The translations under genes and the position numbers were made by a program. DNA of 64,000 bases from Anthoceros angustus (Eukaryota; Plantae; Anthocerotophyta): assembly GCA_010909165.1 (NCBI GenBank), contig VJWM01000186.1:310001-374000 (forward strand), written 5' to 3'. The notes under the pieces were generated by a model. It searched no databases and was not told the DNA's origin. It was given only the letters and a program-made list of their open reading frames with translations. This document shows positions 13,165 to 37,690 of this stretch, piece by piece. Position 1 is the stretch's first letter. Each line of letters opens with the position of its first letter.

Positions 13165-16100
13165 ATGGCGGAACTCTTGACCGACCAAGAACTTGCAAGT
13201 TCTTAGGTGACCAAAAGGCTAAATTGGCTCAAGAGCAAGCAAGCCAAATGGGAAAGAGAATTGGAAGAAATTAAGGAGAAGGAGAGCGAAAAGAAAATCG
13301 ACTTAAAACCCTAGTGGTTCAAGCGGATAATTTCAAAGACAAAGATAGATTCAATGGAAGAGGGTATGACGTGCAAAGTCGCCCAAGGAGTGCTGCGTGA
13401 GTCGTGACTTGTGGGAGATCGCCAGCACCGAGCCTCGCATGCTTGGGACTGATGCACAGGATGTTTGGGATGCCAAGGACCAGAGCTCGAGATGTTTTAG
13501 TTGGTGGCCTTCACAAGGCGATGGTGCGACAAGTTTAAAGGAGACACCTCCATGATATGTGGGGCGCTAGCTCAATTATACTGGCTAAAGATGGAATGAG
13601 CTTATTGACTACCGCCATCTCCATACCACGAAAATGAAGGAGAATGATTCCATTGATCATATATAGCTTTGCTTTCGCCAAAATAATTTTGAGCGTCATC
13701 GAAGAGAAGCTCTCTCGAAAGCGACATTTATTGCTCTCCTTGCCTCCTTACCACCCTCCTATAGGGCCTTTGTGACAACACAAATCATCCTTAGAGCCGC
13801 ACGAGAAGAGAAAGCAAATGGCTCAGCCACACTTTGGACATTAGTGTCCTTGAATAATTGGAGCCATCATACGGGAGGATGATCGTCGACAAGAGAATCC
13901 TAGATCCACTGCAGCGGTGATGTTTACGGGACAAGGTAGAGGAAGAGGGCGTGGCGGGGCCAGCGGCGGATCCTTTCCTCCTAGGCAAATCCTGGTCAAT
14001 ATTCTCCGATTGGAGAAAACTCTTCTTCCAAAAGGTAACAAGAAGAGTGGAGTTATATGTAATTGGTGCAGAATGACAAATCATATGGAGAAGAATGTAG
14101 AAGAGAAGAGCAGGCGAGCCTAGGAAGGAGGCCACCCCTGGAGCACATGTTGCCATGAAGAAACAATCTTCAGCAACACCATCGCTCTCAACATGCTTGG
14201 CATCATCCAAGCCCTCAAACCAATTGGTATTTAGGAGGTGGAGCTACATCACATATCTGTCACAACTCTTTTGAGTCTTACTCGCCAAAGGACATCAAAG
14301 CTGTCCTATTGGGTGATGATCATAACCTCACTATCTACGGTGTTGGTTGATTGTTCTCGAGATGCTCTTAGGCCAAGTTCTCTCACTTTCTCATGTCCTC
14401 CATGTACCATCCATGTGTAAAACCTAGTGTCATTTGCCAACTTATGTTCGAACATAGCATGCAAATCATCCTTCAAGCGGATAATTGTTACTTTCTTATC
14501 TTACAAGTAAGTTTCATACAATGCTCGGGCACACTAGAAGATGGACTATAAACTTTCAGTCCAAGTGGGTCCCTCACATCTCATCAATGTAGCTTCCCAA
14601 CATTCTGTCCCCTCCTCCAATACTATGCTTTGGCACTGTCGTTTAGGTCACCCTAATAGCCAAAAGCTCATCCAAATGTCTAAGGGAAATTTTTACAGAA
14701 CTCCCTCCTCCCAAGATAGAACCCCTGTCTTGGTGTGAAGCCTGTGTTGTCACCAAACGGCACCAAGCTCCTTTTCATAACCCATCTCCATGGCTAAGCA
14801 CCTTGAGTTGGTACATACAGACATTTGTGGTCCCATTTCTGCGCCTTCCTTTAGTGGTTGTAGATACTTTTTAACCTTCACAGCTGATTTCTCTCGTTTT
14901 GTCCTCACATACATCCTCCGCCACAAAAGCCAAGCTTTCCAGTTTTTTAAGGATTATATGATGTGGGCCGAGAGACTTACGGATAAGAAACTCAAAACCT
15001 GCGTTCCGACAATGGTGGAGAGTTTACATCCAATACTTTTGCTGATTTTTGTCGAGCTGAAGGCATCGCTCAACAACTCACCGTGGTACACACTCCTCAT
15101 CAAAATGGCGTAGCAGAGAATAAGAATTTACGCCTTCAAGAGATAACAGGTTGCTTGCTCTCCCAATCTACTCTATCCAAGACCTATTGGAAGCCATAAT
15201 CTGACCATATCTCATCAAATTGCCCACCTCCAGCGGTCAAGGTATGACACCTTATGAAGCATTCACGGTAGAAAGCCTTCTATTGGACATCTTCGATTTT
15301 TGGATCACCCTATGTATTTATTCCAAAGTACAACGCAGAAGTTCGATCCTAAGGCAAGTACACTTTCATTGGCTATACGGAAGGCATAAAAGGATACAAA
15401 TTATTCGACCCTTCTACCAGAAACTCATATATGCCGAGCGTGACTTTTCATGAGTCCCATATTCTTTCCCCGGTGGGAGCTCCCGCCTCTTACTCCGATG
15501 TTCCTCTGCAACATGGAGCATTCGTCTTTGATGATGATGAATTTGTTACTTTTCATCCTCTTCCTGCCAGAGTTTTCCTCTTGTTGAACCTACTCTGCAG
15601 GAGGAGGAGGAGGAGTTAGAACATATTCCATGTCGACCGACTACACAGATCCCGACACACAAGAACCTCTACATTTAGAAGATCACTATCACCTTAGGGA
15701 TGATTTTGATATTCCCGCGGATGATCGACTTGTGAATGAGGACGAGCTCTGAGGCGAACATGAGCGACTCCAACACAAGAGCCACTCATGAAGTGACATT
15801 GAAGAAAATATTCAACCACAACAACTTTGCTTGGTACAACACGAGAACTAGACCTAATATTTCGGGACTGCAGGATGGAAGGAACCACCCCTAGGATACC
15901 TTGCTACCATTGATGATCCCATCTCTCCCTTTTCACCTTATCACCAAGCTCCTTTTCATAACCCATCTCCCACTTACTTGAGTTGGTACATCTGAGACAT
16001 TTGTGGTCCCATTTGCGCCTTCCTTTAGTGGTTGCGAGATACTTTTTAACCTTCACAGATGATTTCTCTCGTTTTGTCCTCACATACATCCTCCGCCACA

Positions 16101-17520
16101 AAGCCAAGCTTTCCGGTTTTTAAGGATTATATGATGTGGGCGAGAGACTTCTGATAAGAAACTCAAAACCTGCGTTGACAATGGTGGAGTTTACATCCAA
16201 TACTTTTGCTGATTTTTGTCGAGCTGAAGGCATAACAACTCACCGTGGTACACTCCTCATCAAAATGTAGCGAGAGAATAAGAATTTACGCCTTCAAGAG
16301 ATAGCAGTTGCTTGCTCTCCCAATCTACTCTATCCAAGACCTATTGAAATGAAGCCATATTACTTACACATATCTCATCAATGATTGACCTCCGCGGTCA
16401 AGGTATGACACCTTATGAAGCATTCACTGGTAGAAAGCCTTCTATTGGACATCTTCGGATTTTTGGATCACCTGCTTATGTCTTTATTCCCAAAGTACAA
16501 CGCAAGAAGTTCGATCCTAAGGCAGCCAAGTACACTTTCATTGGCTATACGGAAGGCATAAAAGGATACAAATTGTTCGACCCTTCTACCAGGAAACTCA
16601 TATATGCCAGGAGCGTGACTTTTCATGAGTCCCATATTCTTTCCCCTTCAGTGGGAGCTCCTGCCCCTCTTACTCCTGATGTTCCTCTCCCTGCAAACAT
16701 GGAGCATTCGTCTTTTGACGATGATGAATTTGTTACTTTTCATCCTCTTCCTGCCACGAGTTTTCCTCTTGTTGACCCTACTCTGCAGGAGGAGGAGGAG
16801 GAGTTAGAACATATTCCACGTCGACCGACTACACCAGATCCCGACACGCAAGAACCTCTACATTTAGAAGATCACTATCACCTTAGGGATGATTTTGATA
16901 TTCCCGCGGATGATCAACTTGTGAATGAGGACGAGCTCGAAGACGAGCCCGAACATGAGCCTGACTCCCCAACACAAGAGCCAGCTCATGAAGTGGTCGA
17001 CATTGAAGAAAATATTCAACCACAACAACCTGCTTCGAGGTACAACCTGAGAACTAGACCTAATATTTCAGGACCTGCAGGATGGAAGGAACCACCCCTA
17101 GGATACCTTGCTACCATTGATGATCCCATCTCTCCCTTTTCACCTTATCACCAAGCTGTATACAAAGCCACAGTTGATCCCGAAGAACCGCTAACCTTGA
17201 AACAAGCATTTTCCTCTCCTGAGAAACACTTGTGGAAGGTCGCTGTAGATTCTGAGTATGACTCTTTAGTTAAGAATTCTACATGGGAATTAGTGAAACC
17301 ACCTAAGGGAAGAAAAATAGTGACTAGCAAGTGGGTATTCAAAATAAAAAGAAAGGGTGATGGTTCCATAGAGAGATACAAGGCACGACTAGTGGCAAGA
17401 GGGTTTACCCAGATCCTTGGTCTAGATTTTATACCCTGGGCCACCTATGCACCAGTTGCCAAGTTTGCTTCCCTAAGAATTATCTTAGCCTTATTTATGA
17501 CCTACACCTCCATATGATGG
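13165..17520 (+). pseudogene. Copia gag-pol (gag, PR, GAG-pre-integrase, INT, start of RT)
   Basis: ORF pieces 13917, 14541, 14790 and 16381-17517 (PYEAFTGRKP...KWVFKIK...RYKARLVARGF). The start coordinate is approximate. Confidence 0.9.
14761..17157. repeat. ~1.2-kb tandem duplication inside the copia integrase
   Basis: Anchor CACCAAGCT at 14761, 15942 and 17149. Confidence 0.92.
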
Positions 17521-17931
17521 GCGACATATCTTCATCTGCGGAATAATGTCATGATTATGGAAAATTGCCATTTGGTACTTTTCATACGATTACTAATTCG
17601 CTCCAAACACGTCTCTTGAAAGCACATGCGTGCGAGCAATCATTGTGATTGACATTTGAATTCGTGTTCAAAGTGCAATGAAGGTGCTAGGGTGCGAGGA
17701 TGCTTGCGGACAAGCGGCAATGCTCGATTATAAGTAGAGTCGTCGCTCGGATGTATTCAAAACGGCCTCATGGCGGAATGAACAACTTGCTACTAGAAGA
17801 TCCGCGTGTCATCCACTCCAAAGACAACGGCCCATACGACATACATTACAAAAGCAGAAAACGTTCTAGCCACCTAAGGAAGTTCACGGTCAAGATTCAA
17901 GCGCACACAAAACCGGCTTCACTATCGGGAA

Positions 17932-20900
17932 CTACGGTGGCGTTTCTCGACGTTCTTCATCTGTCTCTCCGAAAGAGTCCAGACCATCATCGCCCGGCGT
18001 CGTCGTCTTCCTTCCGTCAACCCGGAGGCATGCCATGACCTCTAGTGTCTGTGCCCTCATCGGCGGGGTCTCAGTCCTTTCTTTCATTCGCTTGACCCTA
18101 GAGGCACAATTTGAGCCTTCCCAATATCCTTCTCGTGGCAAACCTCCTTGGCCCAGGTGAGATGGACCACGACGATGCGGCTCATGTGTCGCTCCTCCTC
18201 CGCATCCGGCGGATTCATATCCATGTACACGCAGAATGAATTACGCACACCTCTTATGCCTCGATAGAAATACAATTTCGGCCGACAACAAAGCCATTAA
18301 AGATGACCCACTACACGCACATGCATCCAATATCCAGTCCCTTCCTTGGAGAATGTCTTGATAAGCTTCATCATCAAACCTAAAGGCGGTAGGACATGAG
18401 ACAACAAGTTTGTCAAGTGAATGATAAACCAGCTTTTCACAATATGGTGGGCAATCACCGACCGACCATTATTGAAAGTGCCCGCAAAACATTAGGTAAC
18501 ATGATGACCCGCAACTCGAGCTTTTCTTGACCCGAAGCGGTGACATACTCCACCGTATCAAACCCACCCTTGTCGTTGTTGACATTTGTCTTGTCCCACA
18601 AATGAAACAAGACCACCCCTCTGCACCACTTCCGCATAGGCTCCGCACAATATGTGAATCTTCCACACCATGCATTATGATCATCCTGAACTGCTCGCAT
18701 TCAGTCAAGTCATGGAAGGAATGCAAAACATTACCAACTTGCCAAATATCAAACCTTCCATCCTTTGGGCCCTTCTCGAATCCACGTGGGACATCCATCA
18801 CAAGCAAAGAGTAACTCCTCTTCCTCACAAAACCTCGCATATCCGCACATCTCGAGCATGAATAAATCGCCTTTTTCTCCGACGTGGGACGGTGGTGCAA
18901 CAATCCCTCTTCAATGTCTCTATCTGCGCTCGCTCATCCTCCAAGCCCTTCCAAGTGTTGACCTCATAAATGAACTGAAAGTTTTGGGGCACTTGGTAAG
19001 GACTTCAATGTCTTTGTTGCTGCACAAAAAGCAGGATGCTTGTCAATATTAGGCGCATCTTGAGGAGGGGCCGCATGCGCGCCCCTCCACTTAGGGCCTC
19101 GGCATCTAGACCGGGTGGCGGCATGCCGGCGTCCTCCTCAACCCTACTATATTGGGGGTGAGGCGCGGCATGCCGGCGCCTCACTCCCGCCGCAGGCCGC
19201 GCCCGTGCCGGCGCGCATCGCTGGCGGCGAGGGGCGGAGGAGGGCGCGGCATGCGCTCTCCTCCTCCTCCTCCTCTGCCTATAAAGATCTAAGAAACAAG
19301 AGTATGATAACATACCTTTCCCTCGAAAGCGATCGCGACTACTTTGGGTGGAATGTTGTGGGTACTCTTGCCTCACCATCTCAAAAGATGAACATCCTAA
19401 GTGCTTCGCCATGGCCACTTGGATGATATGCAATTTCTTGCAATATAATTTCATCGACATTCCTTCAAATCCATAAGGCGGTGAGAACTTTCTCGGTGGC
19501 ACTAATAAGCATTTTGCTGCCCGCTCTCCCCAGAATACCTTGAAAGCAACGCCATGGCTTTGTCTGCATCTCCTTGGGCTTCACCAATATACCCTCAACT
19601 TGTTTCGTTTCTTCCACCGCTTCCGCTTGCCTTTGCTCTTTTGCTCAATCCTGCACATGTTTCTTCCATTGCAAGTCACAAGCCTCCCACTTTGCAAAAA
19701 TTTTGTCCACATTCTCCCATACCCTTCCTTCCAACTTATGCACAAGATGTGCGCCTGTGTCAACCTTGTTCTTTTGTAGGCATCATCTTCCGTCCTTCAT
19801 CATCTTGATAAGACCCAATACCTTATACAGTTGAACTTCCAATTCATGGACATATGCACGCCATCCCGCTTGGCTATAAGATTCATCTCGAGATATCTTA
19901 CTTGCTCTATGAACGACATCTTCCGCCGCGTTGTCGACATTGTATTGTGATCATCGCCAAAACCCTCATTTCCGTGTGGTCACCACAATACACATGTGCC
20001 TCTATCCATTTGAAACGCTCTTTCATGATATGTCCGCCAAATGTTGCATTGCCGCAAATGTGTGGTTCCCTTCTAACACACCCATGATGTATTTCTTTGC
20101 CTGAATTTTTCCACCAGTCCTCTAGATCATCACACTCCTTGGGATCAATCATGCACAAAAGGGGCGCCTCCTCAACTCGGCCCTTTCCAATCACGCGAGC
20201 GGATAATTAGTCCACGCTTCATCCACACGCCGAATCATCCGGTTAGATAAGAGGCGGGCAGATTCTCCAGCTTCACCAAGTCCGGACCACCTTCTTCGCA
20301 TATCTGCATCTCGAATTGGTGAGGTAGTCCTCCTCGTGGAAGGAAGATTCCAACCTCTCTTCATCTGTTGAAAGGTGCACTGGGAATGTCTCTCTGGTGA
20401 CATAGTTCCTGTAGTCTTTGCTTTCTTCCGTATTTTACCATGTTCGGCTCCAAACTCTCTCGTTCGCTCGGATCCTCTTGCATCAGACTGCTTCCTCTTT
20501 CCGGATCCCGGCCTTGTATCGAAATGACTAGCTCGTTGCAACAAATTACCAAATGATCCGGACTTGGGTGTCGTGTTGTTCTCTGCTGCGCTTTGTTTGC
20601 CTTTCCTCCAGCCCTCCCGACAATCCAACGGTGGGTCGATAGCTCTCATAGCTTTGGTATAGTAGAAGGGTGGCGCTGTGGGATGAAGGAGTGAGCGCCG
20701 GGCATACCCCCTTCCCTTGCTCCTGCCACATCCATAAACATGCCTGCATGGGGGGTTGGGAGGGACTCCACACCTGGCGTAGGGGCGCGCATGCGCGCCT
20801 CCTCTTCCTTGCTCCGCCACATCCATACCCATGCTGAGGGGTTGGCGGGGACTCCACACCTGGAATGGAGTCGGGCATCGGCGCCACTGCCTGGCGGGTT

Positions 20901-22270
20901 ATAAGGGACTGGGCACAAGCATAGAGTCGAGGCATGTCATAATCCATTATTTGCATCTCTAACCTCGGTTTCCAAGTCATCCCCTTCTTCCATCATCTTC
21001 GTCGGATTGTCCAAGGATGTCGGGCAATGGTCCATCATGCTCATCTTGAGGCCCAGCTCCTCTTCCTCCGAGCTGCGAGAGGTCCTCCTCGTGATTTTGG
21101 GAGGGCTGCCCAGTTCGCCGCATGCTCATTTCTCTCCTGGTCCACGATAGGGCGTGACAAAAGCACGATTGCTTATAGAAAGCCCTCCCACTGTTGACAC
21201 ACAAAACCCATAAGCCAACTCACGCTACATGCGGCTACAAGCGAAATGAAAAGCACTGATTCAAGCACAAAACAATGTTAGCCAACCCGTCCATACGTGT
21301 TGATTCTGTTTAGCCTCTCAAGGCGGTTGTCGGCTCCGGGAACACTTCTTAAGCTTGAACATCCCAAGGCCCACGGTGATAACCTTGAACTCCTCGCCGG
21401 GCGAATTTCATCCGATTGGTGTGGCTTTGTTGTAAGGAGGATCTCGAATTCGGTTCCGTTCAAATCCAGACTTGCCCATACAACCCAGCCAACTCTTGCT
21501 CGCTGATTTTGGCTTAGCTGGTCCAAACCACAGAACCCACAAGAGCGGTGTCCATATGGTCATCATCCAGCCTCGCTTCTGCAAAACCACTCCTTCCCTA
21601 GACAATTCGCATCGATTGAGTTAGTCCACTGAGCATAGTTTCTTCCAAGTTGTATGGCGAAGGCACAGATCGGGTTGCGTTTTCTTCTTCCCCTTCAAGC
21701 CTCCTTGTCTTTCGCCCCGCCTCCACGTGTTGTCGGCTTTTCTGAATTCCGAGCTCGATTTCTTCGCCGCCCACCCACATCCTTATCTCCAGCGATGCTG
21801 GTTGCTTGCGCTGGCGCCACCGATCCTTGTCGGTGGGGGGCGCCATATCCGCGACTTCCTCCTCGCCTCGAGTCGCCTTCTTCTTGGTTTCTTCCGCACA
21901 ATCTCGGAAGGTGGTTCAAGCGAGGCGCCTAGGTCCTTCTTGCTCGGAGAGCCCTCCCGATGCCATGATTTCCGCCACAAGGAACGGACGCGCATCAACC
22001 ACCAATACGATTAGAGTTCTCACTTTGCGGTGGAAAGCAGCGATTGGGGAGAAGAACACCTCCTTCCTTGCGTGGGGATGATCCTCAAAGGCCCTACGCA
22101 TCCAAGCGTTGAATCACTCCCTCTTCTCTCGCGGTCGCCTGCGATCCACAAAGTTGAAGGGGACGTAAAGCCGTTTCGTGCCGTGGTGTGGGGAAATGGT
22201 TTTAAAAGACCTTATCGCCCGGACAAGAAGTTAGGGTTCCCTTCATTTGCCCGATTCTCATAACCTCCAT
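17932..22270 (-). pseudogene. Multi-exon gene: disordered N-terminus, ParB/Srx-like domain, helical region, beta-class DNA N6A/N4C methyltransferase-like domain (frameshifted as assembled)
   Basis: Read across frameshifts: RRVDEAW...VLEGNH...AHVYCG...LAxDHN (20245-19940); YSLLVMDVPRGF (motif IV); LWDKTN...E; PYCEK/PLGLMMKLIKTFSKEGDWILDACACSGSSLMA...GRNCISIE (motifs X-I-II, 18450-18260). GT-AG introns at 19315-19020 and ~21296-21191. Gene ends are approximate. Confidence 0.78.
18258..18870 (-). other. Beta-class amino-methyltransferase domain (N6_N4_Mtase-like)
   Basis: Motif order IV (18781-18795) ... X-I (18307-18390) ... II is the beta permutation. Confidence 0.8.
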
Positions 22271-22676
22271 GGATTCGCGACGTACATAATGCATAAATTC
22301 CATTTTAGGATAATGTCCTAACTACACCTCTTAATGGTGGTGTCGTTTTGGCGGTGGGCGGCGCCATTACGATGGCGTGCGATTGTTTGCCGTTATAGGT
22401 CTAGAACTTGTGCATTGGCGGCGCCAGCGCCTTTCTCGGTGCGTTGGGTGGCGTTGAAGTTGGTGGCTTGGCGTTATATTTCCCTTTTCCTGGAGAACAC
22501 ACTTTCGTTTGTGTCGTGGGTGAAGTGGCATCGTCGCGGAATGTTACAGAGACTCACGCATGGGCGGTGAAGTGAGCGATCTTTGTTGTATCCAATGCAC
22601 TCCATGCAATAATGTTCCCTTGATGTTCTCTAGCTAAACTTGGCGTTTTCATGTTGCGGAAGGGAGGACTTGCATC

Positions 22677-25600
22677 ATGATTCAACCAAGAGTCGACGCA
22701 AGAAAAAGGAACGCAATGCAAGATTGAATGCGTCCATCCTCCTGTCCGATGATGCCGCACAACACACCGCAGTCTCCAAATGGCTTGTGGGTAGTAGATG
22801 GTCGTGTTAATTGCGTAGTTCTGCCTCACGTGCATGCCAACGGTGACAGAGGCTGGTTCCCCGACTGTCACCAAATCGGCGTTGATGAAGGTTGGAGGGC
22901 GGGTCCGACCTCACCAAGGATTCCTCGGGGTGTTCCTCGAACCAAGGAACATCAATTTGTATTTGTGGGCGGAGTCCTAGTGGCCGCGCCATGAAGAACC
23001 GAATAGTTCCCACGCACGTCGCCGGGTTTGTTTCCAATTGAGGAAAGGAGGGTGTTCTGAAAACCCTCGTCGATGCACCTTTAGTGAGACAGAGGAAGGC
23101 GACCGTCACGCAGTCATTCCACCCCAAACCACCGAAACATTTGTGGCGCCACGGACATGCAATCCGTGGTTCGTAGAAGGCGGGCAAGTGGAGTTCCTTT
23201 GTCGAAGAGCGACTCGGCGTTGTCACAATGACTTAAGCCATGCGCAATGCGTCCATCAATGTCTAAGGCCAATTTCCATGAGCAACGTTATCGTTTTCGC
23301 GAATGGGGAGGCGAGCAAGAGACATTTCTTGATCCCTCGGTCGTGGACTTACAGCCACCGAAAGGACAAGGTCATCACGCATATAATGGGGCGGCCGCGC
23401 ATTCGGTGTTGTTTGCAAGCTTTTGAAGAGTATCGCATCGGCTCGAGAGGTACGAGGAGTTGAAGAGCGGTGTTATGCAATGCACCGTGGGATGGGTCAA
23501 GAGTGAATCCGCGACAACCATCTACACACGATCGGAGCCGTTCGGATGGATAGTTTTCAAGTGATGGCGGAAAGGCTAGCGTTGATGTGTTCCACTGGAC
23601 ACGTTCTCAAAGTTGGAGATCCGGGCCATGTCGGATATGACACGGTCTAGTATGCGATTCGTGTCGTATCCCTATTTTCCGACCCTACGGAGGACCAACT
23701 TCCGAAGGTTAGGATTCCAAAGTCTAATAGGTTTTCCACTTGCTCTTTATGTGAAGGATCAAGCGCACCATCCGAACACTTGGAGCGACCAAGGTTTGTT
23801 CTTCATATCCTGCTGGGATGTGCATAGTTTCTAAGAACCATTTTGCGGAAGGATGCATGACGCCTGTTTACATGTCTGTCACAGTGTATATGCATATGTG
23901 GCTTCTTAAAAGGTGGGCCACCGTGCTTGCGTCTCGGTTGTCGCGGAGGTGTGGCAATGTAGATACCAATGTGCAAGACTCACATAGGTTGCATAGGCGG
24001 AAGAGTGCTTCCATTGTCGGGCCCAGCACCCTTCGGTACATGCACGGCCGCCGGGGCGGCCCCTCAGCGCCTCGGGGGCGCGGAGGCGTGCCCCCAAAGC
24101 TTTTCCGCATGTCGGTCCGGGGAGGGCCATCGCGCCCCTCAGCGTGATTAACCGCACCCATGTTCATGTTCATGTGGTTGTGCAACAATGTCTCGATATA
24201 ATACTGTGTCGTCTCCATTTTTGCAGAGGTTTACGAAGGAGCTTTGGCATCACAGTGCGACTAAGCAATGAGAGAGACAAAGCGGAAACATCGGTCCAAA
24301 AGTTATAGTCAGCCCCACAAGTATATGCGACTTGCTATCGATGGCATGGACGAGAAGACAGAGCTCCCTCATTTCCTCCGTTATCCCAAAGAGTTGGCGA
24401 GGCATCACTTATTAATGTTCATGTGGTGGGATGTATGATACATAATTACACTTTCAAGGCCGGGCATATTTACACTACGCTAATCACTGTGGCCAATCTC
24501 ACTATCCATATAATTGATGTCATATTTTCTTACGAAGGGTGCTTCCTAAAGTTCTTTACCTCCACTTGATAATACTTGTGCGAGAACAAGAACCAGCTAC
24601 TATTCGCGTACCTAAATATGCTCATCGACCTTGGTGTTCGTTAAAATAAAGGTTGGGTTCCTATTGGTTGGTCATACCCATGATCGGGTTGATCAAATGT
24701 TTTCTTGTTTCTCAAGCTTCTTAGGCACAAAGAAGCGTTTACTATTGATACACTTTGGAGATTTTGACGAGCTTTCACCCCAACGCTGAAGTTAAAGTAA
24801 TAGAGGTGATTTTCGGTCTTATGTATGGCCCATTAAGAAGGGGACGAGAGGATATGCATACAAGGCGGCAGTGAACCAGTTGAATAATCTTTCCTTCCAA
24901 CATCAATTTAAAATCACGAGAGAGGAGCGACAGGACCGAGGTCAAGTTACGGTCATTCGAAGTAAGCAGTACTCAACATCCCCTCAATGGGAATCAGAAG
25001 ATGGGTTGGAATTTTTGAAATTTGTTCCATCAACCACCGTACGCCCCACTCCCCTCATGCCGCTGAAGGCGAGAGACAAAAAGGGTCAAGATGGAGGTCT
25101 TTCACCAACGGCAGGTGTGGCGCACTTGAAGCATGGCTTCGAACTTGGCGGCGTATATCACGCCATCGGAGAGGTGTGGTGGAGGTTGTTTTGGGTCGAC
25201 AGAAGGAATTGCCACTATTGTGGAGAACAATATTGCTCTAGTGCTTAAACAACCGTGGAGGTGGTACAACAGAAGAGGTGGAGGCCCACATGCCGCCACT
25301 TCAAGTGCGGAGGAGGTTGTGCTTGATGAAGCATTACTAAGAGAAGTTCCTCAACGGGATATGTATTTGGGAGCTCACCGGAATGCAAGTCGACAACATC
25401 AAGAAATAGAAAGGATGAATGGAGATGTCAAAGAGATAAGGAAGGGCATGTTCATTGCAACTCCATGCTCGGAGATACACATACAGGCTTTGGATTGGGA
25501 AGGTGGAAAGCGTAGACTTGATTGTGCGAACCCATTTCTTATGGTCCAGTACGGTGCACACTGCGATGCTTTTGAAGGGAAATATGTTGAGGAGTTCTTT

Positions 25601-25870
25601 GTTAGAGGACCGACAATCGACGATCGCGAAATGGGAAGAGAGTGGGAAAGAGAAATTTACCCAAAACATTCGAAACTATTTGTGAATAAGACTATTATTC
25701 TCTATTATGGGTTCAACCTCAATGCAAGAAAGCACCTTTACGCTCCGACAAGAAGGCTATTCGAGATAGAATGAATCAGCGACCTTATCTCGCAGCTGGA
25801 GAGGAGGATGACCATGAAGTGGATGATGGATGTCCTTTGGTTGTGAAGGAATTCGGTGTCCCAAGACTAG
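22677..25870 (+). pseudogene. Sola1/DUF7869-like DDD transposase, one predicted intron, frameshifted
   Basis: PKVRIPKSNRFSTCSLC (23702-23752); YMRLAIDGMD (D at 24340); LPKVLYL-LDNTC-ENKN (D at 24568); GFLLVGHTHDRVDQMFS (24655-24705). Intron 23794-24226 (GTTTGT...TTTTTGCAG). The start is approximate. Confidence 0.85.
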
Positions 25871-26019
25871 AGATTTTAGGGTTTTGTTTTCACGATAGAG
25901 TTAGCGTATGTTGGCTTCCGAGTTTCATACTCGGCGTGATTACTAGATAGGTTGGTGAACCGACGCTTTTACGCCTATGTAATGAAGGCGTTCTGGTCCA
26001 TGCTTTTACGTGGTCTACC

Positions 26020-26750
26020 GGTTGTCTTCCAAAAATACCGTGGCGCCGCATCCGGCGCCATCATTGACAATACCCTAGCTTGCACAGTTCACTCCTAATA
26101 TGTTTGAACATTTGTCACATGGGATGGCATTTCGGTCCATGTGTTCCCTAGTTCTCAAGGTTAGTCACTTGTTTCTACCGTTTGTAGCGGTATAAGCGGT
26201 GGAGGCGGCATGCGCCTCCACCGCCCACCGATTCACTCCTCATGTGTTTAAACGTTTTGAAGGGATGGCATTTCGGCGGGGCCATGCGTCCACGAGTTTA
26301 AGGTAAGTCACTTGTTTCTCTTGTAGAAAATATAGATAGTGGAGGCATGCGGGCCTCCGACAATACCTAGCCCGCCGATTCGCTCCTCATATGTTTCAAC
26401 GTTTGTCGGATGGGACGGCATTTCGCGGGTCCATGTGTCCCTAGTTCTTTCCAAGGTAAGTCACTTGTTTTCGTGTAGGCGGTGTAAGCGGTGGAGGCCG
26501 GCATGCGGCGCCTCCTTACACCGCCTTCACTCGCATATGTTACAACGCTTTGTCGAAGGGGCGGCATTTGGCGGGACCATGCGTCCGAGTTGTCCAAGGT
26601 AAGTCACTTGTTTCTCTGTCAGAAGATAGTGGGCGCGGCATGCCGCCTCCATTGACAATACCTCCGCATTCAATATCCATATGTTTCGATGTTTGTCGGA
26701 AGGCGGAATTTCTAGTCCATGCGTCCAAAAGTTCTCTCTAAGGTAAGTCA
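26020..26750. repeat. ~145-bp subterminal tandem array, ~5 units with palindromic cores
   Basis: AGG(T/-)TAAGTCA-type marker at ~26158, 26301, 26454, 26597 and 26740. Cores resemble TGGAGGCGGCATGCGCCTCCA. Confidence 0.88.
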
Positions 26751-27076
26751 ATCTCCTCACTCTTCCGGAGACTTTTGTTCCCCTTGATTGTTTTTCTTTG
26801 ATAGCACCCATCCATGAAGGTGAGACTCGGTACAAAACACACACCAAAGGCATGGAAAGCAGCAATTGCATGTCTTGATTCGGAAGATGGAAACAGGGAC
26901 TTGCACCTGCATGTTGAATTTTCATTGTCATCTCCAATAGTTATTACTCCCTCATTAAAACGGTTTTCCAAAATCATATACCCTTTACGTCTTGAATGAA
27001 TAGCAAGAGGCCTCTCGTGCCCTCTTGCCTGTAGAAAGTCATGTATGGGCATTATTTCAAGGCAAATGTGTGCCCA

Positions 27077-30000
27077 TCGAGGTTGTATATCCCTTTTCCA
27101 GCCTATGTCATGACATTATCCGGCTTCACACACAAAGCAACTGTAATTTTGAAGCATTTTTTGGAAAATGGCGGTGATCAGCGCTTGCTCCCATGTTCGC
27201 CGGGTTTCCTTATTCATTGCAAAAGCCGCCTCGCTTATTCACGATGAATATTATCGTGTTGACGCTAACAAAGATATTTGCATGGGCGTAAGAAGAAATC
27301 TACATGAGGCGACTGAGGCTATGAGGTCAAGGAAAGGAAGATTGGGTATGCAAACTTATTAAGTGCACATGCGGCCCGAAACAATCGCAAAGAAAGAATG
27401 GAATGTCGTCATACATAATAAACTAGTTAATCGGGCTTTAGACAAAGCAAGGCCGATGCTAGTATGTACATATTGATATCGTGAAGTGATATCATATATC
27501 TCTTACTTTATGTTGACGACTTATTTATGGCCTCATCCTCACTCTTACGGAGACTTTTGTTCCCCTTGGAAACTAAGGCATGGTTAAGTGTCATTTTGAG
27601 ATGACGATTTAGGGAGATGACTTATGCCCTTGGCGTCAATGTTATAAGGGATAGAGGCAATAAAACCTTAAGCTTAGTACAGACTAAGTATATTAAGGAA
27701 AGCTTAGCTAAGGGTGGAGGTAGATTTCTAGAGAGAGAATTGACCTTTTGGTCATTATTTTACTCAATACAGTAAAATTTATTACAATAGAGTAGAAAAC
27801 ATGCCAGGTAGGGTGAAAATGGTCCACCATCAATGTTGAAAGCAGGGCAGTAGGGTACATCTAGGTAGAAGCTCATTCTAGAAATCCCACCAAAATCGCT
27901 AATCTAGCAAAAACATTTTCTGTTAAGTAATATTCATGCGGATCCAAGATATACAAAAAACCAACAAAGAAACCTTTTCTTTGCGTAGTTTCCTATATAT
28001 CCAGAATGGCATGAAATACAAATTAAAATAATGTAGAGTAAATACCAGAATAGATTGAACTCTACTACTGCCATTTCTGCCATTTGAAACCTACAAATAA
28101 AACATAAGTTAGGACAAAACGCAAAATAGGCTGATAACTAGGGAACACTGGAAATATTCAGTATAACCACAAATACTTAAGGAATGATACTCACCTTATT
28201 TTGGGAAATTGACTGTGCAATTGTACAATTCGAAAATGTAATTTTCACGACCACTTGACTTGATTGGCACAACTTGTCCAACATTATCATAGTTGGCCGA
28301 AAGTGATGAAGTTGAGGGCTTCAAGAAATTGTCCGTCTTCCGTAAGGTCACAACCTAATAGAACACTACAATTAGTTTTCAATCACCGAAAGTGATTTAA
28401 TAGAGCATAACAACACTTCATCGATCCCGACGGATTTTCGCATTGTAAAGGAAGCGATCGGAGGAATCCTGTGGGAACGAGGGCAGCCGGTGGAGGTAAA
28501 TGTGGTCGAACTTATTGATTTGGGGCACCCGAAATTGAAATTGAAATTGAAATTGCGGTTGCTTGGTGCCCGATGTGCCTTGGTTGGATTCGGTTCGAGA
28601 GTCAACTTGATGACAGAGGAGACTCATCAACTTGGGTTCACGAGTTTCACCCGGCCAGTGTTTTTGGATGGCCGACCAAACTGAGGAGGAAACCACCGGG
28701 AGTGTTGAGAAATATACCCACTGATTGAGGTCTCACCTTCCACCTCACCTACATTGTTATGAGGCCCGTGTCGATTTAGGCTACAAGGTTTTGATAGAGT
28801 CGTCATGGTACCGCCTGTCTTTGATTTCGCCAGCGGCATCACGCTTAAGTCAAGTAGGGTAGGACTGCTGAGGTCGCTTTTGTGTCATGGAGCAAGGCTC
28901 CCTATGAGGAGTCTACGCTACAATATGGGTACACCTCGGTAGCACGGGGTAAGCTCCTCGAGCGGACCGAGCTACCGGGGACCTTCAATCGAGGTTGTAT
29001 ATCCCTTTCCAGCCTATGTCATGACATTATCCCGGCTTCACACACAAAGCAACCGTAATTTTGAAGCATTTTTTGGAAAATGGCGGTGATCAGCGCTTGC
29101 TCCCATGTTCCCGCGGTTTCAGTTTATTCATTGCAAAAGCCGCTCGCTTATTCACGATGAATATTATCGTGTTGACGTCAAAACAGGATATTTGCATGGG
29201 CGTCTGCAAGAAGAAATCTACATGAGATGTACTGAGGCTATGAGGTCAAGGGAAAGGAAGATTGGGTATGCAAACTTATTAAGTGCACGGCTCGAAATAA
29301 TCGTAAAAGAATGGAATGTCGTCATACATAATAAACTAGTTAATCGGGCTTTAGACAAAGCAAGGCCGATGCTAGTATGTACATATTGATATCAGGAAGT
29401 GATATCATATATATCTTACTTTATGTTGACGACTTATTTATGGCCTCATCCTCACTTCCTCTCCTAGCTGAAACTAAGGCATGGTTAAGAAGTCATTTTG
29501 AGAGACTGAGGAGAGATGACTTATGTTGGCGTCAATGTTATAAGGATAGAGGCAATAAAACCTTAAGCTTAGTACGACTAAGTATATTAAGGAAAGCTTA
29601 GCTAAGGTGGAGGTAGATTTCTAGAGAGAATTGACCTTTTGGTCATTATTTTACTCAATACAGAAAATTTACAATAGAGTGAAAACATGCCGGTAGGGTG
29701 AAAATGGTCCACCATCAATGTTGAAAGCAAGAGGGTACATCTAGGTAGAAGCTCATTCTAGAAATCCCACCAAAATCGCTAATCTAGCAAAAACATTTTC
29801 ATATAATATTCATGCGGATCCAAGATATACAAAACCAACAAAGAAACCTTTTCTTTGCGGAGTTTCCTATATATCCGAATGGCATGAAATACAAATTAAA
29901 ATAATGTAGAGTAAATACGAATAGATTGAACTCTACTACGCCATTTCCTCGCCATTTGAAACCTACAAATAAAACATAAGTTAGGACAAAGCAAAATAGG

Positions 30001-30906
30001 CTGATAACTAGGAACACTGGAAATATTCAAGATAACCACAAATACTTAAGGAATGATACTCACCTTATTTTGGGAAATTGATGCAATTGTAATTGTACAA
30101 AATGTAATTTTCGACCACTTGACTTGATTGGCACAACTTGTCCAACATTATCATAGTTGGCGAAAGTGATGAAGTTGAGGGCTTCAAGAAATTGTCCGCC
30201 TTCCTGTAAGGTCACAACCTAATAGAACACTACAATTAGTTTTCAATCTGCTGAAAGTGATTTAATAGAGCATAACAACACTTACTGATCCTGACGGATT
30301 TTCGCATTGTAAAGGAAGCGATCAGAGGAATCCCTGAGGCTGTGGGAACGAGAGGGCAGCCAGTGGAGGTAAATGTGGTCGAACTTATTGATTTGGGGGC
30401 ACCCGAAATTGAAATTGAAATTGAAATTGCAGGTTGCTTGGTGCCCGATGTGCCGTTGGATTCGGGTTCGAGAGTCAACTTGATGACAGAGGAGACAGCT
30501 CATCAACTTGGGTTCACAGAGTTTCACCCGGCCCGAGTGTTTTTGCGGATGGCCGACCAAACCAGGAGGAAACCACTGGGAGTGTTGAGAAATATACCCA
30601 CTGTGATTGGAGGTCTCACCTTCCACCTCACCTACATTGTTATGAGGCCCGTGTCAGATTTAGGCTACAAGGTTTTGATAGACAGGTCTTGGCTGTATGG
30701 TACTGCCCGTGTCTTTGATTTCGGTTGTAGCGGCATCACGTTTAAGTCAAGTAGGGTAGGACCTGCTGAGGTCGCTTTTGTGTCATGGAGCAAGGCTCCC
30801 TATGAGGGGGAGTCTACGCTACAATCTGATGGGTACACCTCAGGTAGCACGGGGGTAAGCTCCTCGAGCAGTGACCGAGCTTACCGGGGACCTTCAGTCG
30901 AGGTTG
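27077..30906. repeat. ~1.9-kb tandem duplication spanning the transposon right end, copia RT, an AT-rich block and gypsy protease
   Basis: Anchor TCGAGGTTG at 27077, 28989 and 30898. Confidence 0.92.
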
Positions 30907-32410
30907 CTGAAATAAAAGTTGATTTGGAGTATTCCTGCTTGCACATAGAGGATGTCGTAGAAGAGTCAGAGGATGAGGCACATAGAGAGGGAGTAGCCTT
31001 TTGGAAAGGTAAAACCTATGATCGCGATTTTCCTGAGGAGGGATCCGGGATTAGTGCAGGTAGCAGTCCGGAGGGGACGTATGTAGATCCCGATGCTGTA
31101 GAGGATTTAGAGTTAGAGCCCGGCAAGGTAGTCAGGATTTCTAGGTATCTAGGAGAGGTCGAGAAAGAAGAGTTCCGTAGTGTGCTTAGAGAATACGTCG
31201 ATGTGTTTGCTTTCAAGATTACTGACATGACAGGAATTCCGGAGGAGCTAGGTATACATCGGATTGATTTGAAGGAAGGTAGTACTCCGGTGAGGATCAA
31301 GCAGGACAGATTGAATCCCAAATATTCCATGGTCGTTAAGGATCAACTCGACCAATATTTGGGCGGTGATTTCCTACTTAGTGAGTGGTTGCCCCATCGT
31401 GATTGTACCCAAGCAACAGGGAAATCGGTGTGTCAAGATTTTAGGAAGCTCAACGAAGAAGGATCACCACCCTTACCCTTCATGGACGTATCTTGACACG
31501 GTAGCAGACATGAAATGTATAGTTTCTGAAGCGGTACTGGGTTACAATCAGATTTGCGGAAGGAGGACCGGGACAAGAGGCAGCGTTCTGGCAGTTGGAG
31601 CACCTACGCTTATTCAAAGCTCCCTTTCGGATTGTGTAATGCGCCCGCCACGTTCCAGCGCGTGGTGAACGCGATATTCCGGGACTTCTTACGGAAATTC
31701 ATGGAGGTATTTCTGGATGATTTTTGCGTGTTTGGGAAAAGGCTCCTGCACCTGGACCATTTGAGACGGTGCTTCCAGAAGTGCAGGGAGTCGAACATGA
31801 AACTTCATCCGGGGAAATGTTATTTTGGTATGACGGAAGGCATATTATTGGCACATCGGGTTTCGGAACGGGGATTGCAGGTAGATAGGGAGAAAGTAGC
31901 AGTGATAGCGGAGATGGATGCCCCACAAACGGTGAGGCAAGTGCGAGCTTTTATAGGACTAGTAGGGTATTACAGGAGGTTTATCAAGGACTTCGCCAAG
32001 AAGGCAGCCTTGTTGACACAGCTGACCAAGAAGGATGTACCCTTTGAATGGACAACCGCGAGGCAGGAGGCCTTTCAACAGTTGAAGGACAGTTTGGTGA
32101 GCGCTCCAACATTACAACCCCCAGATTGGGAAAAGCCGTTTCATGTATACGTGGATGTGTCCGCTTATGCCATTGGGACCATCTTGAGTCAAAAGGACGA
32201 AAAGAAACGGGATCACCCGATTTTCTATGCTGGGAGGCAGCTCACAGATGCTGAGAGGAACTACTCGACCACGGAGCGAGAGGGTTTTGGGATCATCTAT
32301 TCCTGTAAGAAGTTTAGACATTATTTGCTGGCTTGCAAGGTGACATTCCATGTGGATCATTTCGCATTGAAGTACCTTGTGAACAAAGCGGAGTTATCAA
32401 GACGGATAGT
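30290..32410 (+). pseudogene. Ty3/gypsy pol: protease, RT, RNase H (truncated)
   Basis: LDSGSRVNLM, PFGLCNAPATFQR, FLDDF, YVDVS, YSTTEREG, VDHFAL. Confidence 0.93.
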
Positions 32411-35400: not shown

Positions 35401-37690
35401 TAAGTTACTTTCCGCGTATTTATCCTGCTTTTGACCCGGAGTGGGGTCCTGACTTATCCTGTTACAGCGTGGTCGGAGCTCGCCATGGTAAATGTAGGGT
35501 CCGTTACCCACTCGAGTCCGATGTATACTCCGAGTCGGTCCGAGCGCCATCCGTGCTTATTCCTCCTTTTACTTATTTCTACTGGACCTATGAAAAACAA
35601 AACCCGACTCATTTCCTAACTTTGGAAGTCCGTAGTCCACATACTCCTTCTCATCATTGGCGTCTCCGCCAACACTAGGCATGATACTTCTTCACCCGCC
35701 ACCCGTTCACCCGGGTAGACAGATTCTCCATCCAACGCCGGAGCTAGCCGGACCCATTTAGTATACACTACAGTAGGGTCCCATCCACGCAGTGGAGCTT
35801 GCCGGAAAGTGCATGTGGCGATCGTGAAGGGCCAAATCTCCTCCTTCACATACTCCACGGTTCCGGCGTCTGCCATGCCACGTCCCCGTTGATTGCATTA
35901 CATGAGTTGCATTATTTGTTGCACCTCTTGGGTCGGTTTCCTCCTCCTTCACATACTCCCCTTCAAGGCCGCCTCTATCTTCCCGGCGGTTGCAACGAAC
36001 TTACCATTCTATTGGCGCGTCCGCTCCTCGATGCTCTTCTCCCCGCTTCCGTCGTCTCAAGCAGGGGCCACTAGAGTCCCCGTCTTGTCCCCATGCCCTT
36101 CATCCCCTTGAGCCTTCGAGTCCATCTATTTGAAGCGGGCGAGAGGCGCCAATGTCTTAAGGAGCGCTGGTAATAGGCAAAGTCCGAATCAACTGCTTGA
36201 ATTGCCTCTTCCACATGCCGAGCACGATACTCCCTTCGCCATAAGTGTTCCTGCGCCATGTCTTTGTTGGACCACCTCCAGCTCGGCACCGAGGCTACAA
36301 GGCCGCACATTCCCCATCGCTCCGGCTCCACAGCTAGCTTAGCTTGCCCATAGCGCGCTCCCCTTCCGCCTTTCTTATACGGACGGCGGCTTCTTTCTGG
36401 AAGGTGCCTCCTCCGCTCATTCTCAACTCCGCCATCTCCTCTCCAAAGGCCGGGCAACGCCGATTGCGTGCTTCGCCTGTGTCCTTCTCCATTTCGGCGG
36501 CGTCACGCTCCCTGCTCCATCGCCTCTCCGTCCGCCAATGTAGCCGGCAGCTCCTATTTCTCGTTCGTGATCCGTGATCACGCCCAGCGATTACCATTCC
36601 TCTCAATGGTAACTTGAGCCTCCCGAGTCTCCTTGCGGTCTTCCATCTCTGCAGGCGCTCCACCTCCATCCGAGACCAGGAGATCCTCCATCTCCTTGCG
36701 GTGCTTCCTCCTCCTCGGCATGGCTGCCTCACCGCCGCCTCCTGCTCCTTCTTCAAAGTTAGCTTGGCTATCCTCGCTCTCTCCTCCATGGTTCGATCAC
36801 GCCTAGTGATAACAATCAGCGGGCTTCCGCCTCCACCTGGCTTCGCCCACTTGGCCGTGTCCACCGCCGCCTCGCTTACTGCTGCCTTACTGCGTGCATT
36901 GGCCCACGCGCGATGGCGGGCGTGAATACTATAACCTCGCGGCCTACGGCCCTGACTGCCGCATGCCGGAGCCTCCACTCGGGGCCGTCCACGTGGCGCC
37001 AGTCTGCCCTCACGACTCAACTTAAGTTACTCGCGCATTTATCTGTTTTGACCCGGAGTGGGGTCCGGACTTATCCGTTACACCCAGGCGTGGTCGGAGC
37101 TCGCCATAGTGGTACCGGGTCCGTTACCCACTCGAGTCCGATGTATACTCAGTCGGTCCGGGCGCCATCCGTGCTTATTCCTCCTTTTCGACTTATTTCT
37201 ACTTGGACCTATGAAAACAAAACCCGACTCATTTCCTAACTTTAAAAGTCCGTAGTCCACATACTCCCCTTCTCATCTATTGGCGTCTCTGCCAACACTA
37301 GGCATGATACTTCTTCACCCGCCACCCATTCACCCGGGTAGACACACCTCCATCCAACCGGGGTTTGAGCGGACCCATTTGCGTATACACTGCACAGTAG
37401 GGTCCCATCCACCGCGGTGGAGCTTGCGGAAAGTGCATGTGGCGATCGAAGAAGGCCAAATCTCCTCCTTCACATACTCCCGGTTAGAAGGCCCTGGCCA
37501 TGCCACGACTTGCGTTGATTCCATGTTGCATTCACCTCTTCCACCTCCGTATTATCTTTGGACAAACCCTAGCAATCGCTCCAGTTGGCTTTCCTCCTCG
37601 GTTAGCCGGCCTTCCATCAGGATCCGAAGTGTTGGCACCTCAAATTCGACCGGCATAACCGGTGAATGCCCATAGGTTAAGTAATACATG
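32411..37690 (-). mobile_element. Inverted 3' half of a gypsy element (integrase C-terminus, charged extra ORFs, start of 3' LTR) with internal duplications
   Basis: Minus strand TYGHSPVMPVEFEVPTLRI and a GPY/F-type WMGPY region. Duplicated blocks ~32750-34810 and ~34255-37540. Putative LTR start TGTGCGCGCCCGG at 32448. Confidence 0.7.

What the first reader, a model, noticed from the sequence alone, without database searches (positions are those of the whole stretch)
17521..27260. Two-gene Sola1-like DNA transposon carrying its own ParB-fused, prokaryotic-type DNA amino-methyltransferase
Seen: a discrete ~9.7-kb insert splits the copia RT codons HMM|DVK, has imperfect inverted ends, and holds two divergent genes. 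The + gene has the DGMD / LDN..ENKN / VGHTHDxxDQ triad. The - gene has a ParB/Srx-like domain followed by beta-class MTase motifs IV, X, I and II. Established: that triad typifies the Sola1/DUF7869-like transposases. ParB-MTase fusions are common in phages and bacterial mobile elements. Eukaryotic amino-MTases such as bdelloid N4CMT, Marchantia 4mC enzymes and the DIRS Dam-like domain are rare. Inference: a plant cut-and-paste element encoding a 6mA/4mC writer or DNA-binding derivative that could mark itself, regulate transposition or counter host 5mC silencing. It could also be a route by which amino-MTases spread in plants. I cannot confirm that this pairing is undescribed.
Basis: partly seen in the sequence, partly recalled or inferred. 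Interest (0 to 1): 0.92.

Follow-up and report, generated by a model that had tools for sequence, protein, structure and literature searches.

The report
Sola1 transposon with ParB-like methyltransferase gene
This 9.7-kb insert is a real cut-and-paste (Sola1-type) transposon that carries, opposite its transposase gene, a gene with a bacterial-type DNA methyltransferase-like domain; the same pairing was published for a brown alga in 2025, so this is a further copy and host record rather than a new kind of element.

Summary
The insert is real. A second copia copy in the window is continuous where this one is split, at exactly 17520|27261.

The + strand gene is a Sola1/DUF7869 transposase (Pfam E 4e-11; E 1.5e-26 to a full DUF7869 protein).

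No profile library recognised the - strand gene. An exhaustive protein search led to one independent 9-kb public contig (L002). It has the same divergent layout: a DUF7869 transposase facing a gene that ends in a beta-class N6/N4 DNA methyltransferase domain (PF01555 E 7e-10; phage MTase family E 7e-15; solved MTases E 2e-6). The window's - strand is colinear with that gene (summed E 1e-23). A chance nested insertion is therefore excluded.

- Both copies read D-[V/L]-P-R at the catalytic motif IV position, not DPPY, so methyl transfer is doubtful.
- The ParB-like fold could not be verified.
- A GC-rich palindrome around GGCATGCC occurs 10 times in the element and essentially nowhere else in the window. 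It is a plausible binding site.
- The pairing is already published for Ectocarpus Sola1-1_Ec32, and this scan has noted the family many times on other DNA of this genome.
- The assembly here is indel-rich, so the frameshifts may be technical. Whether the copy is dead cannot be told.

The parts
17521..27260 (.). Whole insert: a Sola1-type DNA transposon copy in a copia reverse-transcriptase gene
   Evidence: Both flanks are contiguous in a second copia copy (57997|57998).
17521..17524 (.). Possible left copy of a 4-bp target site duplication (GGCG). Its partner is GACG at 27261-27264.
   Evidence: Three of four bases agree. Sola1-1_Ec32 has a 4-bp TSD (supplement of PMC12477816). Inconclusive.
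17522..17547 (+). Left imperfect inverted end
   Evidence: Aligns to the reverse complement of 27235-27257. Score 18, reached by 21 of 1000 shuffles.
27235..27257 (-). Right imperfect inverted end
   Evidence: A second short inverted pair lies at 17538-17554 / 27108-27124.
18210..20598 (-). Accessory gene (ParB-like N-terminal part plus beta-class MTase-like C-terminal part), broken by frame changes and stops as assembled
   Evidence: Colinear tblastn/tblastx chain to L002 2455-6122, summed E 1.1e-23. Single matches: E 9e-13, 5e-11 and 4e-9.
19991..20161 (-). ParB/Srx-like core candidate: LLCMIDPKE at 20135-20161, GNHTFAA at 20050-20070, FKWIEAHV at 19991-20014
   Evidence: Matches L002 'ALPMVVMLHPGQ...YVLGGNHSWQA...YQWMEATV'. 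The fold is unverified: the Atlas feature search gives a ParB_N cluster only at rank 26, score 0.92.
19323..19439 (-). Conserved middle segment of the accessory protein
   Evidence: 51% identical to the L002 74-aa ORF, E 5e-11.
19065..19263 (.). Palindrome cluster A: four copies of GAGG-N-GCATGC-N-CCTC, lying between two coding segments of the accessory gene
   Evidence: L002 has a short-repeat array (7 x TTCATGCYYA, 5155-5394) at the syntenic place.
18628..18840 (-). N-terminal half of the MTase-like domain. The motif IV position reads DVPR (18784-18795).
   Evidence: 36% identical to P0002, E 9e-13. Exhaustive phmmer gave E 1.8e-4 library-wide. P0002 abuts the PF01555 ORF in L002.
18210..18435 (-). 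C-terminal half of the MTase-like domain: motif X at 18339-18389 (other frame), motif I LDACACSGS at 18304-18327, motif II-like at 18210-18251
   Evidence: Aligns to L002 aa 60-142, which carries PF01555. Both pieces score above all shuffles against a phage-MTase profile.
23696..25765 (+). Sola1/DUF7869 transposase gene: DGMD at 24340, LDNT at 24565, ENKN at 24582, GHTHD at 24670, and a conserved C-terminal domain at 25352-25765
   Evidence: Pfam DUF7869 E 4.3e-11. tblastn with the L002 transposase: E 1.5e-26, 1.4e-7 and 7e-7. L001 chain E 4e-25. The motif run is shared with the published Sola1-1_Ec32 transposase.
26088..26650 (.). Palindrome cluster B: a tandem array near the right end (period about 146/296) with four palindrome copies at 26199, 26339, 26491 and 26629
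27076..30906 (.). Two-copy tandem duplication (27076-28997 / 28988-30906) that includes the last 185 bp of the insert
   Evidence: 90% identity. The differences are indel-rich with ts/tv about 1. It may be an assembly overlap that was not collapsed.

Best explanation
This is one copy of a Sola1-superfamily cut-and-paste DNA transposon (transposase domain = Pfam DUF7869), inserted into the reverse-transcriptase gene of a copia retrotransposon.

Like the published Sola1-1_Ec32 of Ectocarpus, it carries an accessory gene on the strand opposite the transposase. The C-terminal part of that gene is a phage/bacterial beta-class N6A/N4C DNA methyltransferase-like domain. The N-terminal part resembles ParB/Srx domains.

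Shown here:
- the insertion;
- the transposase family;
- homology and colinearity of the accessory gene with an MTase-bearing gene on an independent contig;
- an element-specific palindrome array.

Inferred:
- The accessory protein recognises the element's own GGCATGCC-centred palindromes through its N-terminal domain.
- It then acts on the element's DNA or chromatin.
- Motif IV is D-[V/L]-P-R in two distant copies, while the AdoMet-binding motifs X and I are kept. I therefore think a binding or regulatory role, or non-canonical catalysis, is at least as likely as ordinary 6mA/4mC writing.

As assembled both genes are broken, but the assembly is indel-rich. This copy may or may not be dead.
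For: - Insertion. The flanks are contiguous in a second copia copy.
- Transposase. Pfam DUF7869 E 4.3e-11; E 1.5e-26 to the L002 DUF7869 protein, which itself scores Pfam E 1.7e-49. The run 'VGHTH..DQ.FSCF' and 'DN..ENKN' are shared with the Sola1-1_Ec32 transposase printed in the paper's supplement.
- Accessory gene. Exhaustive phmmer found P0002. It lies on L002 directly before an ORF with PF01555 E 7e-10, phrog_67 E 7e-15, CcrM NCBIfam E 4e-5 and solved beta-class MTases E 2.4e-6. The window's - strand matches L002 colinearly, summed E 1.1e-23.
- Pairing. The divergent orientation and gene order are the same in L002 at about 35% protein identity. The pairing is published for Ectocarpus.
- Palindromes. 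There are 10 in the element and 1 doubtful in the other 54 kb; shuffles average 0.15. An array sits at the syntenic place in L002. A similar idea is published for red-algal Plavaka ParB-domain genes.
- Copy number. High-depth short contigs of run X1 cover the coding parts.
Against: - No window piece of the accessory gene hits Pfam, PHROGs, solved structures or the Atlas directly.
- The MTase assignment for this copy passes through a single intermediate contig of unknown organism.
- The N-terminal half of the MTase domain shows no significant similarity to phage MTases, so 'motif IV = DVPR' rests on position only.
- The ParB-like fold is unverified: the AlphaFold model was unusable at pLDDT 40 and there were no profile hits.
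- TIRs are weak and the TSD is uncertain.
- No RNA evidence was found.
Confidence: 0.8

Rival explanations
1. The accessory protein is a working DNA amino-methyltransferase (6mA or 4mC writer) that marks the element's own DNA.
For: In L002 motifs X, I and the following stretch are well kept: 66 bits to a phage-MTase profile and E 2.4e-6 to solved enzymes, including N4C and N6A MTases. The nearest phage MTases also depart from DPPY, reading DIPY or DILY. The authors of PMC12477816 predict 4mC or 6mA for the Ectocarpus protein.
Against: The aromatic residue of motif IV is Arg in both copies seen (DVPR, DLPR). The N-terminal catalytic half is not recognisably MTase-like. No methylation data were available.
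Confidence: 0.3
2. The two genes are together by chance: a nested insertion of an MTase-bearing element into, or next to, a Sola1 element.
For: Only one copy could be examined in the window. The termini are weak.
Against: L002 shows the same neighbours, order and divergent orientation at about 35% protein identity and with no DNA similarity. The same pairing is published in Ectocarpus. The insert has only one pair of boundaries in the copia gene.
Confidence: 0.03
3. The insert or its breaks are assembly artefacts: a chimeric join rather than a transposition, and sequencing errors rather than mutations in the genes.
For: The window has seven adjacent two-copy duplications whose differences are indel-rich with ts/tv about 1. 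X1 contigs differ from the window mainly by small gaps. The transposase core changes frame five times in 350 nt, and two of the shifts are single-base losses in CC or GG runs.
Against: The join falls between adjacent codons of the copia gene on both sides, with a possible 4-bp duplication. That is what a transposition gives and not what a random mis-join gives. The artefact reading therefore applies to the frameshifts, not to the element.
Confidence: 0.1

Closest known systems
Sola1-1_Ec32 of Ectocarpus (Dinatale et al. 2025, Genome Biol 26:320, PMC12477816)
   Same: It has a Sola1 transposase with the DN..ENKN and VGHTH..DQ.FSCF signature. An accessory gene on the opposite strand combines a ParB-like domain with an N4C/N6A-type MTase domain. 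The TSD is 4 bp and the inverted ends are imperfect.
   Different: It is 21.5 kb against 9.7 kb here, and the accessory protein is 1104 aa. Its termini are AACCG/CGGTT with a 282-bp TIR. The host is a brown alga. I could not see its motif IV. No palindrome array is reported for it in the text I read.
Plavaka accessory genes PAG2/PAG3 of Bostrychia (Petroll et al., bioRxiv 10.1101/2025.02.11.637652)
   Same: [quoted passage not shown] Tandem arrays of inverted repeats lie next to the gene and are proposed as self-binding sites.
   Different: The superfamily is different (Plavaka/KDZ). There the ParB domain is fused to a 2OG oxygenase, and the N6A MTase domain sits on another protein together with SET.
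Phage and bacterial beta-class N6A/N4C DNA methyltransferases (PF01555; TTHA0409 2zie, CcrM, RsrI, MboIIA; phage GMA4 and Lrm1 methylases)
   Same: Motif order is IV ... X-I-II. Motifs X and I are conserved in the relative L002.
   Different: Here motif IV is D-[V/L]-P-R and the catalytic half has diverged beyond detection. The domain is fused to a long eukaryotic N-terminal region and carried by a eukaryotic transposon.
Marchantia MpDN4MT1a/b 4mC methyltransferases (bioRxiv 10.1101/2021.02.12.428880)
   Same: They are prokaryote-type amino-MTases in a plant-lineage nuclear genome.
   Different: They are host genes with shown 4mC activity in sperm. The paper mentions neither a ParB domain nor a transposon context. 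No relation to this element was tested or found.

Membership tests
Sola1 superfamily of DNA transposons | Transposase with the Sola1 RNase H-like catalytic core (DGxD ... DN..ENKN ... GHTH..DQ) | tested here: met
   Pfam DUF7869 E 4.3e-11. E 1.5e-26 to the L002 DUF7869 protein. The motif runs are shared with the published Sola1-1_Ec32 transposase. That DUF7869 equals Sola1 rests on that one published sequence.
Sola1 superfamily of DNA transposons | 4-bp target site duplication | tested here: inconclusive
   GGCG (17521-17524) against GACG (27261-27264), three of four bases. The sequence is noisy.
Sola1 superfamily of DNA transposons | Terminal inverted repeats | tested here: inconclusive
   The best terminal alignment, 17522-17547 against the reverse complement of 27235-27257, is reached by 21 of 1000 shuffles.
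Sola1 superfamily of DNA transposons | Repeated in the genome | tested here: met
   146 short contigs of run X1, with word depths of 20-180, lie on the coding parts. Many notes of this scan describe other copies; I did not check those.
Transposon-borne ParB-MTase accessory gene (as in Sola1-1_Ec32) | Lies inside the element on the strand opposite the transposase | tested here: met
   The - strand gene is at 18210-20598 and the + strand gene at 23696-25765, within one insert. L002 has the same layout.
Transposon-borne ParB-MTase accessory gene (as in Sola1-1_Ec32) | ParB-like N-terminal domain | tested here: inconclusive
   Only a GNH[ST]..A motif and an Atlas feature hit to a ParB_N cluster (rank 26, score 0.92). 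No Pfam, PHROG, NCBIfam, solved-structure or BLAST hit. The model had pLDDT 40.
Beta-class N6A/N4C DNA methyltransferases (PF01555) | AdoMet-binding motifs X and I in beta-class order | tested here: met
   L002 ORF: PF01555 E 7e-10, phrog_67 E 7e-15, solved structures E 2.4e-6. Window pieces 18244-18468 and 18300-18491 align to it and score above all shuffles. Motif I in the window reads ACSG instead of AGSG.
Beta-class N6A/N4C DNA methyltransferases (PF01555) | Catalytic motif IV (D/N/S)-P-P-(Y/F/W) | tested here: not met
   DVPR at 18784-18795 and DLPR in P0002. The assignment is by position (about 140 residues before motif X) and is not statistically supported.
Beta-class N6A/N4C DNA methyltransferases (PF01555) | DNA methyl-transfer activity | not testable with these tools
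   This needs an enzyme assay or kinetic/nanopore methylation calls.

The most novel reading that the evidence does not exclude
The plant-lineage branch of these Sola1 elements has a conserved self-recognition module. A ParB-like domain would bind the element's own GGCATGCC-centred palindrome arrays. It is joined to an MTase-derived domain that keeps AdoMet binding but has a conserved non-canonical D-[V/L]-P-R catalytic loop. The protein would then either methylate DNA by an unusual active site, or work without methyl transfer, for instance as an AdoMet-sensing binder that shields or regulates the element. Neither has been described for a eukaryotic transposon.
Probability: 0.2. Interest if true: 0.7.

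Novelty: new member of a known kind. Interest (0 to 1): 0.4.

Why it matters
Transposons that bring their own DNA-binding and DNA-modifying protein could set their own epigenetic state, which bears on how elements escape or recruit host silencing. That idea is already in print for brown, red and green algae.

This locus adds three things:
- a further host lineage;
- a compact 9.7-kb version of the element;
- two concrete, testable features, namely a conserved D-[V/L]-P-R motif in place of the catalytic tetrapeptide, and an element-specific palindrome array that could be the binding site.

It also warns that the assembly in this region is indel-rich, so calls of 'pseudogene' from frameshifts in this genome need care.

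Tried and rejected
**Searches with window pieces that found nothing**
- Pfam, PHROGs, solved structures and the Atlas on stop-free pieces of the - strand gave nothing usable.
- Word-index protein searches with 18472-18933(-) and 25130-25771(+) were blank.

**Hits rejected**
- P0001, the best hit of the exhaustive search, is a false positive: a repetitive kinase model in which 'RYDARVDLWSVGEILL' is repeated.
- 'DPPY' at 21411-21620(-) and 'SPPY' at 19008-19580(-) look like motif IV but are chance. Neither lies in a segment homologous to the L002 MTase domain, and the SPPY residues are not conserved in L002.

**Attempts to verify the ParB-like fold**
- The AlphaFold2 model of the L002 N-terminal core with a two-sequence alignment had pLDDT 39.8. 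No fold search was run on it.
- tblastn of that core against phages gave only chance hits.
- None of the phage or plasmid MTases I fetched was ParB-fused.

**Attempts to find more copies or expression**
- The metagenome scan gave only a 1.6-kb contig holding the transposase core (L001).
- Cluster look-ups gave singletons.
- No RNA evidence: run X2 laid no contigs.
- L002 shares no DNA similarity with the window. Its organism is unknown to me.

Pieces were searched apart, by reference.
- The 14-nt duplication that splits the L002 MTase ORF is described, not mended.


Full report
**1. The insert**

A second, related copia copy lies at about 55-58 kb of the window.
- The left flank 17200-17520 aligns to 57677-57997.
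- The right flank from 27261, and its duplicate from 29174, continues at 57998.
- The reference reads CAT ATG ATG | GAT GTA AAG.
- A 4-bp duplication is possible (GGCG at 17521-17524 against GACG at 27261-27264) but not certain.
- The ends are only weakly inverted. 17522-17547 aligns to the reverse complement of 27235-27257 with a score that 21 of 1000 shuffles reach.
- A second 17-nt inverted pair lies at 17538-17554 / 27108-27124.

**2. The + strand gene**

Piece 24616-24786 hits Pfam DUF7869 at E 4.3e-11. They lie in three frames.

The transposase of an independent contig (L002; Pfam DUF7869 E 1.7e-49) matches 24366-25765 at E 1.5e-26, 1.4e-7 and 7e-7. A 1.6-kb metagenome contig (L001) extends the match upstream to 23696.

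The published Sola1-1_Ec32 transposase, printed in the supplement of PMC12477816, shows 'DNTVAENKN' and 'MVGHTHIQIDQIFSCF'. Those are the same runs as here. This ties DUF7869 and this gene to Sola1. That paper lists a 4-bp TSD and imperfect TIRs for the Ectocarpus element.

**3. The - strand gene**

No stop-free piece gave a hit in Pfam, PHROGs, solved structures, the Atlas or the word-index protein search.

The exhaustive phmmer search with 18472-18933(-) gave two hits.
- P0001 is a repetitive kinase artefact.
- P0002 (86 aa, E 1.8e-4) is a true relative. 'YSLFILDLPRG...RIVMFHSVDDVSIVRSVL' matches 'YSLLVMDVPRG...RMIIMHGVEDSHIVRSLC'.

P0002 lies on Logan contig L002 (9089 bp). That contig holds a DUF7869 gene on one strand. 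On the other strand it holds a row of ORFs:
- a 488-aa ORF;
- a 74-aa ORF;
- P0002;
- directly after P0002, a 286-aa ORF. This ORF has PF01555 at E 7e-10 (profile positions 163-217), phrog_67 'DNA methyltransferase' at E 7e-15, CcrM NCBIfam at E 4e-5, and solved beta-class MTases (2zie, N4C MTases, MboIIA, CcrM, RsrI) down to E 2.4e-6. It also matches 238 phage records annotated as DNA methylases.

P0002 and the 286-aa ORF are separated only by an exact 14-nt tandem duplication, which shifts the frame. They are therefore one domain.

The window's - strand from 20598 to 18211 is colinear with L002 2455-6122. The summed tblastx E is 1.1e-23, and single matches reach 9e-13, 5e-11 and 4e-9.

Motif X (PPLGLMMKLIKTFSKEG, 18339-18389) lies in a different frame from the flanking KLVYHSLDKLVVS and from motif I (LDACACSGS, 18304-18327). 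That explains why profile searches of single frames failed. Against a small profile built from seven phage and plasmid MTases, these two window pieces score above all 200 shuffles each. The N-terminal half does not.

**4. Do the two genes belong together?**

L002 shares no DNA similarity with the window and only about 35% protein identity. It nevertheless has the same genes in the same order and the same divergent orientation.

**5. What kind of MTase?**

At the place of motif IV, about 140 residues before motif X, the window reads D-V-P-R and L002 reads D-L-P-R. Several of the nearest phage MTases read D-I-P-Y or D-I-L-Y, so a hydrophobic second residue is not unusual. The aromatic residue, however, is replaced by Arg in both eukaryotic copies. 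Two unchecked notes of this scan report DVPR in other copies of this genome.

In L002 motifs X and I are well kept. I therefore regard AdoMet binding as likely. Ordinary base methylation is uncertain.

**6. ParB-like part**

The L002 488-aa ORF and the window share 'ALPMVVMLHP.../LLCMIDPKE', 'YVLGGNHSWQA/VLEGNHTFAA' and 'YQWMEATV/FKWIEAHV'. The G-N-H-[ST]-x-x-A box recalls the GxxRxxA box of ParB/Srx domains. That comparison is from my own knowledge.

The tests gave little:
- no profile or solved-structure hit;
- only chance BLAST hits against phages;
- an unusable model, pLDDT 39.8;
- in the Atlas feature search, eukaryotic hypothetical proteins and DUF3723 first, and a ParB_N cluster at rank 26, score 0.92.

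The ParB assignment thus rests on the Ectocarpus authors' statement for their protein and on resemblance.

**7. Palindromes**

The motif GAGG-N(1-6)-RCATGC-N(1-6)-CCTC, allowing one substitution, occurs 10 times in the element. There are four copies at 19065-19263, inside the accessory gene between two coding segments. Four more lie in a tandem array at 26199-26650 near the right end, and single copies lie at 20780 and 25281. Only one doubtful match lies in the other 54 kb, and shuffles of the element average 0.15.

L002 has seven direct copies of TTCATGCYYA at the syntenic place, 5155-5394; no shuffle of 200 reaches its total of 11 matches.

For red-algal Plavaka elements, arrays of inverted repeats next to a ParB-domain accessory gene have been proposed as self-binding sites. 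The same reading fits here, but it is inference.

**8. State of this copy and quality of the sequence**

As assembled, both genes are broken. Several observations suggest technical indels:
- The transposase core changes frame five times in 350 nt while staying 60-70% identical to L002 within each fragment. Two of the shifts are single-base losses in CC and GG runs.
- Short high-depth contigs of run X1 differ from the window mostly by small gaps, for example one other letter and six gaps in 100 nt.
- The window holds seven adjacent two-copy duplications. Their copies differ by nearly as many indel events as substitutions, with ts/tv about 1.

I cannot tell whether the copy is dead.

The X1 contigs also show that the coding parts are multi-copy in that sample. 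No RNA evidence was obtained.

**9. Novelty**

The pairing of a Sola1 transposase with an opposite-strand ParB-like + N4C/N6A MTase gene is published (PMC12477816, 2025). [quoted passage not shown] In the papers I could search, I found no description for land plants or their close relatives, but the library is incomplete.

I did not verify the host organism myself. This scan has noted the same family many times on other DNA of this genome, and one earlier follow-up had already pointed to the brown-alga paper. I checked that lead and it holds. The finding is a new member of a known kind.

Noticed in passing
window 108-8190; 14761-17157; 27076-30906; 32754-34820; 34255-37524; 42910-44517; 55102-57965: Seven adjacent two-copy tandem duplications, 80-93% alike. 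Their copies differ by almost as many small indels as substitutions, with ts/tv about 1. This looks like uncollapsed read overlaps or an indel-rich long-read assembly rather than evolution.
   Followed up: partly
window 17300-21500 against run X1: Short high-depth contigs of an independent DNA run differ from the window mainly by 1-4 nt gaps. Frameshifts in this genome's assembly may be technical.
   Followed up: partly
window 25352-25765 (+); L002 transposase aa 348-490: A C-terminal domain of the transposase is conserved (28% identity, E 7e-7) and has no Pfam hit. Its function is unknown.
   Followed up: no
L002 5866-5893: An exact 14-nt tandem duplication splits the MTase domain of the relative into two ORFs (frame +2). 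That copy is therefore broken too, or mis-assembled.
   Followed up: partly
L004, L005, L009, L011 (phage and plasmid MTases nearest to the L002 MTase): These beta-class methylases read DIPY or DILY at motif IV instead of DPPY. They may mark the prokaryotic clade from which the transposon domain came.
   Followed up: no
window 20715-20885: An 86-bp unit is repeated 1.9 times in the region between the two genes. It contains one of the palindromes (20780).
   Followed up: no
window 16348-17514 and 30276-31493: These are long stop-free copia stretches (389 and 406 aa) next to very choppy ones. Sequence quality seems to vary along the window.
   Followed up: no
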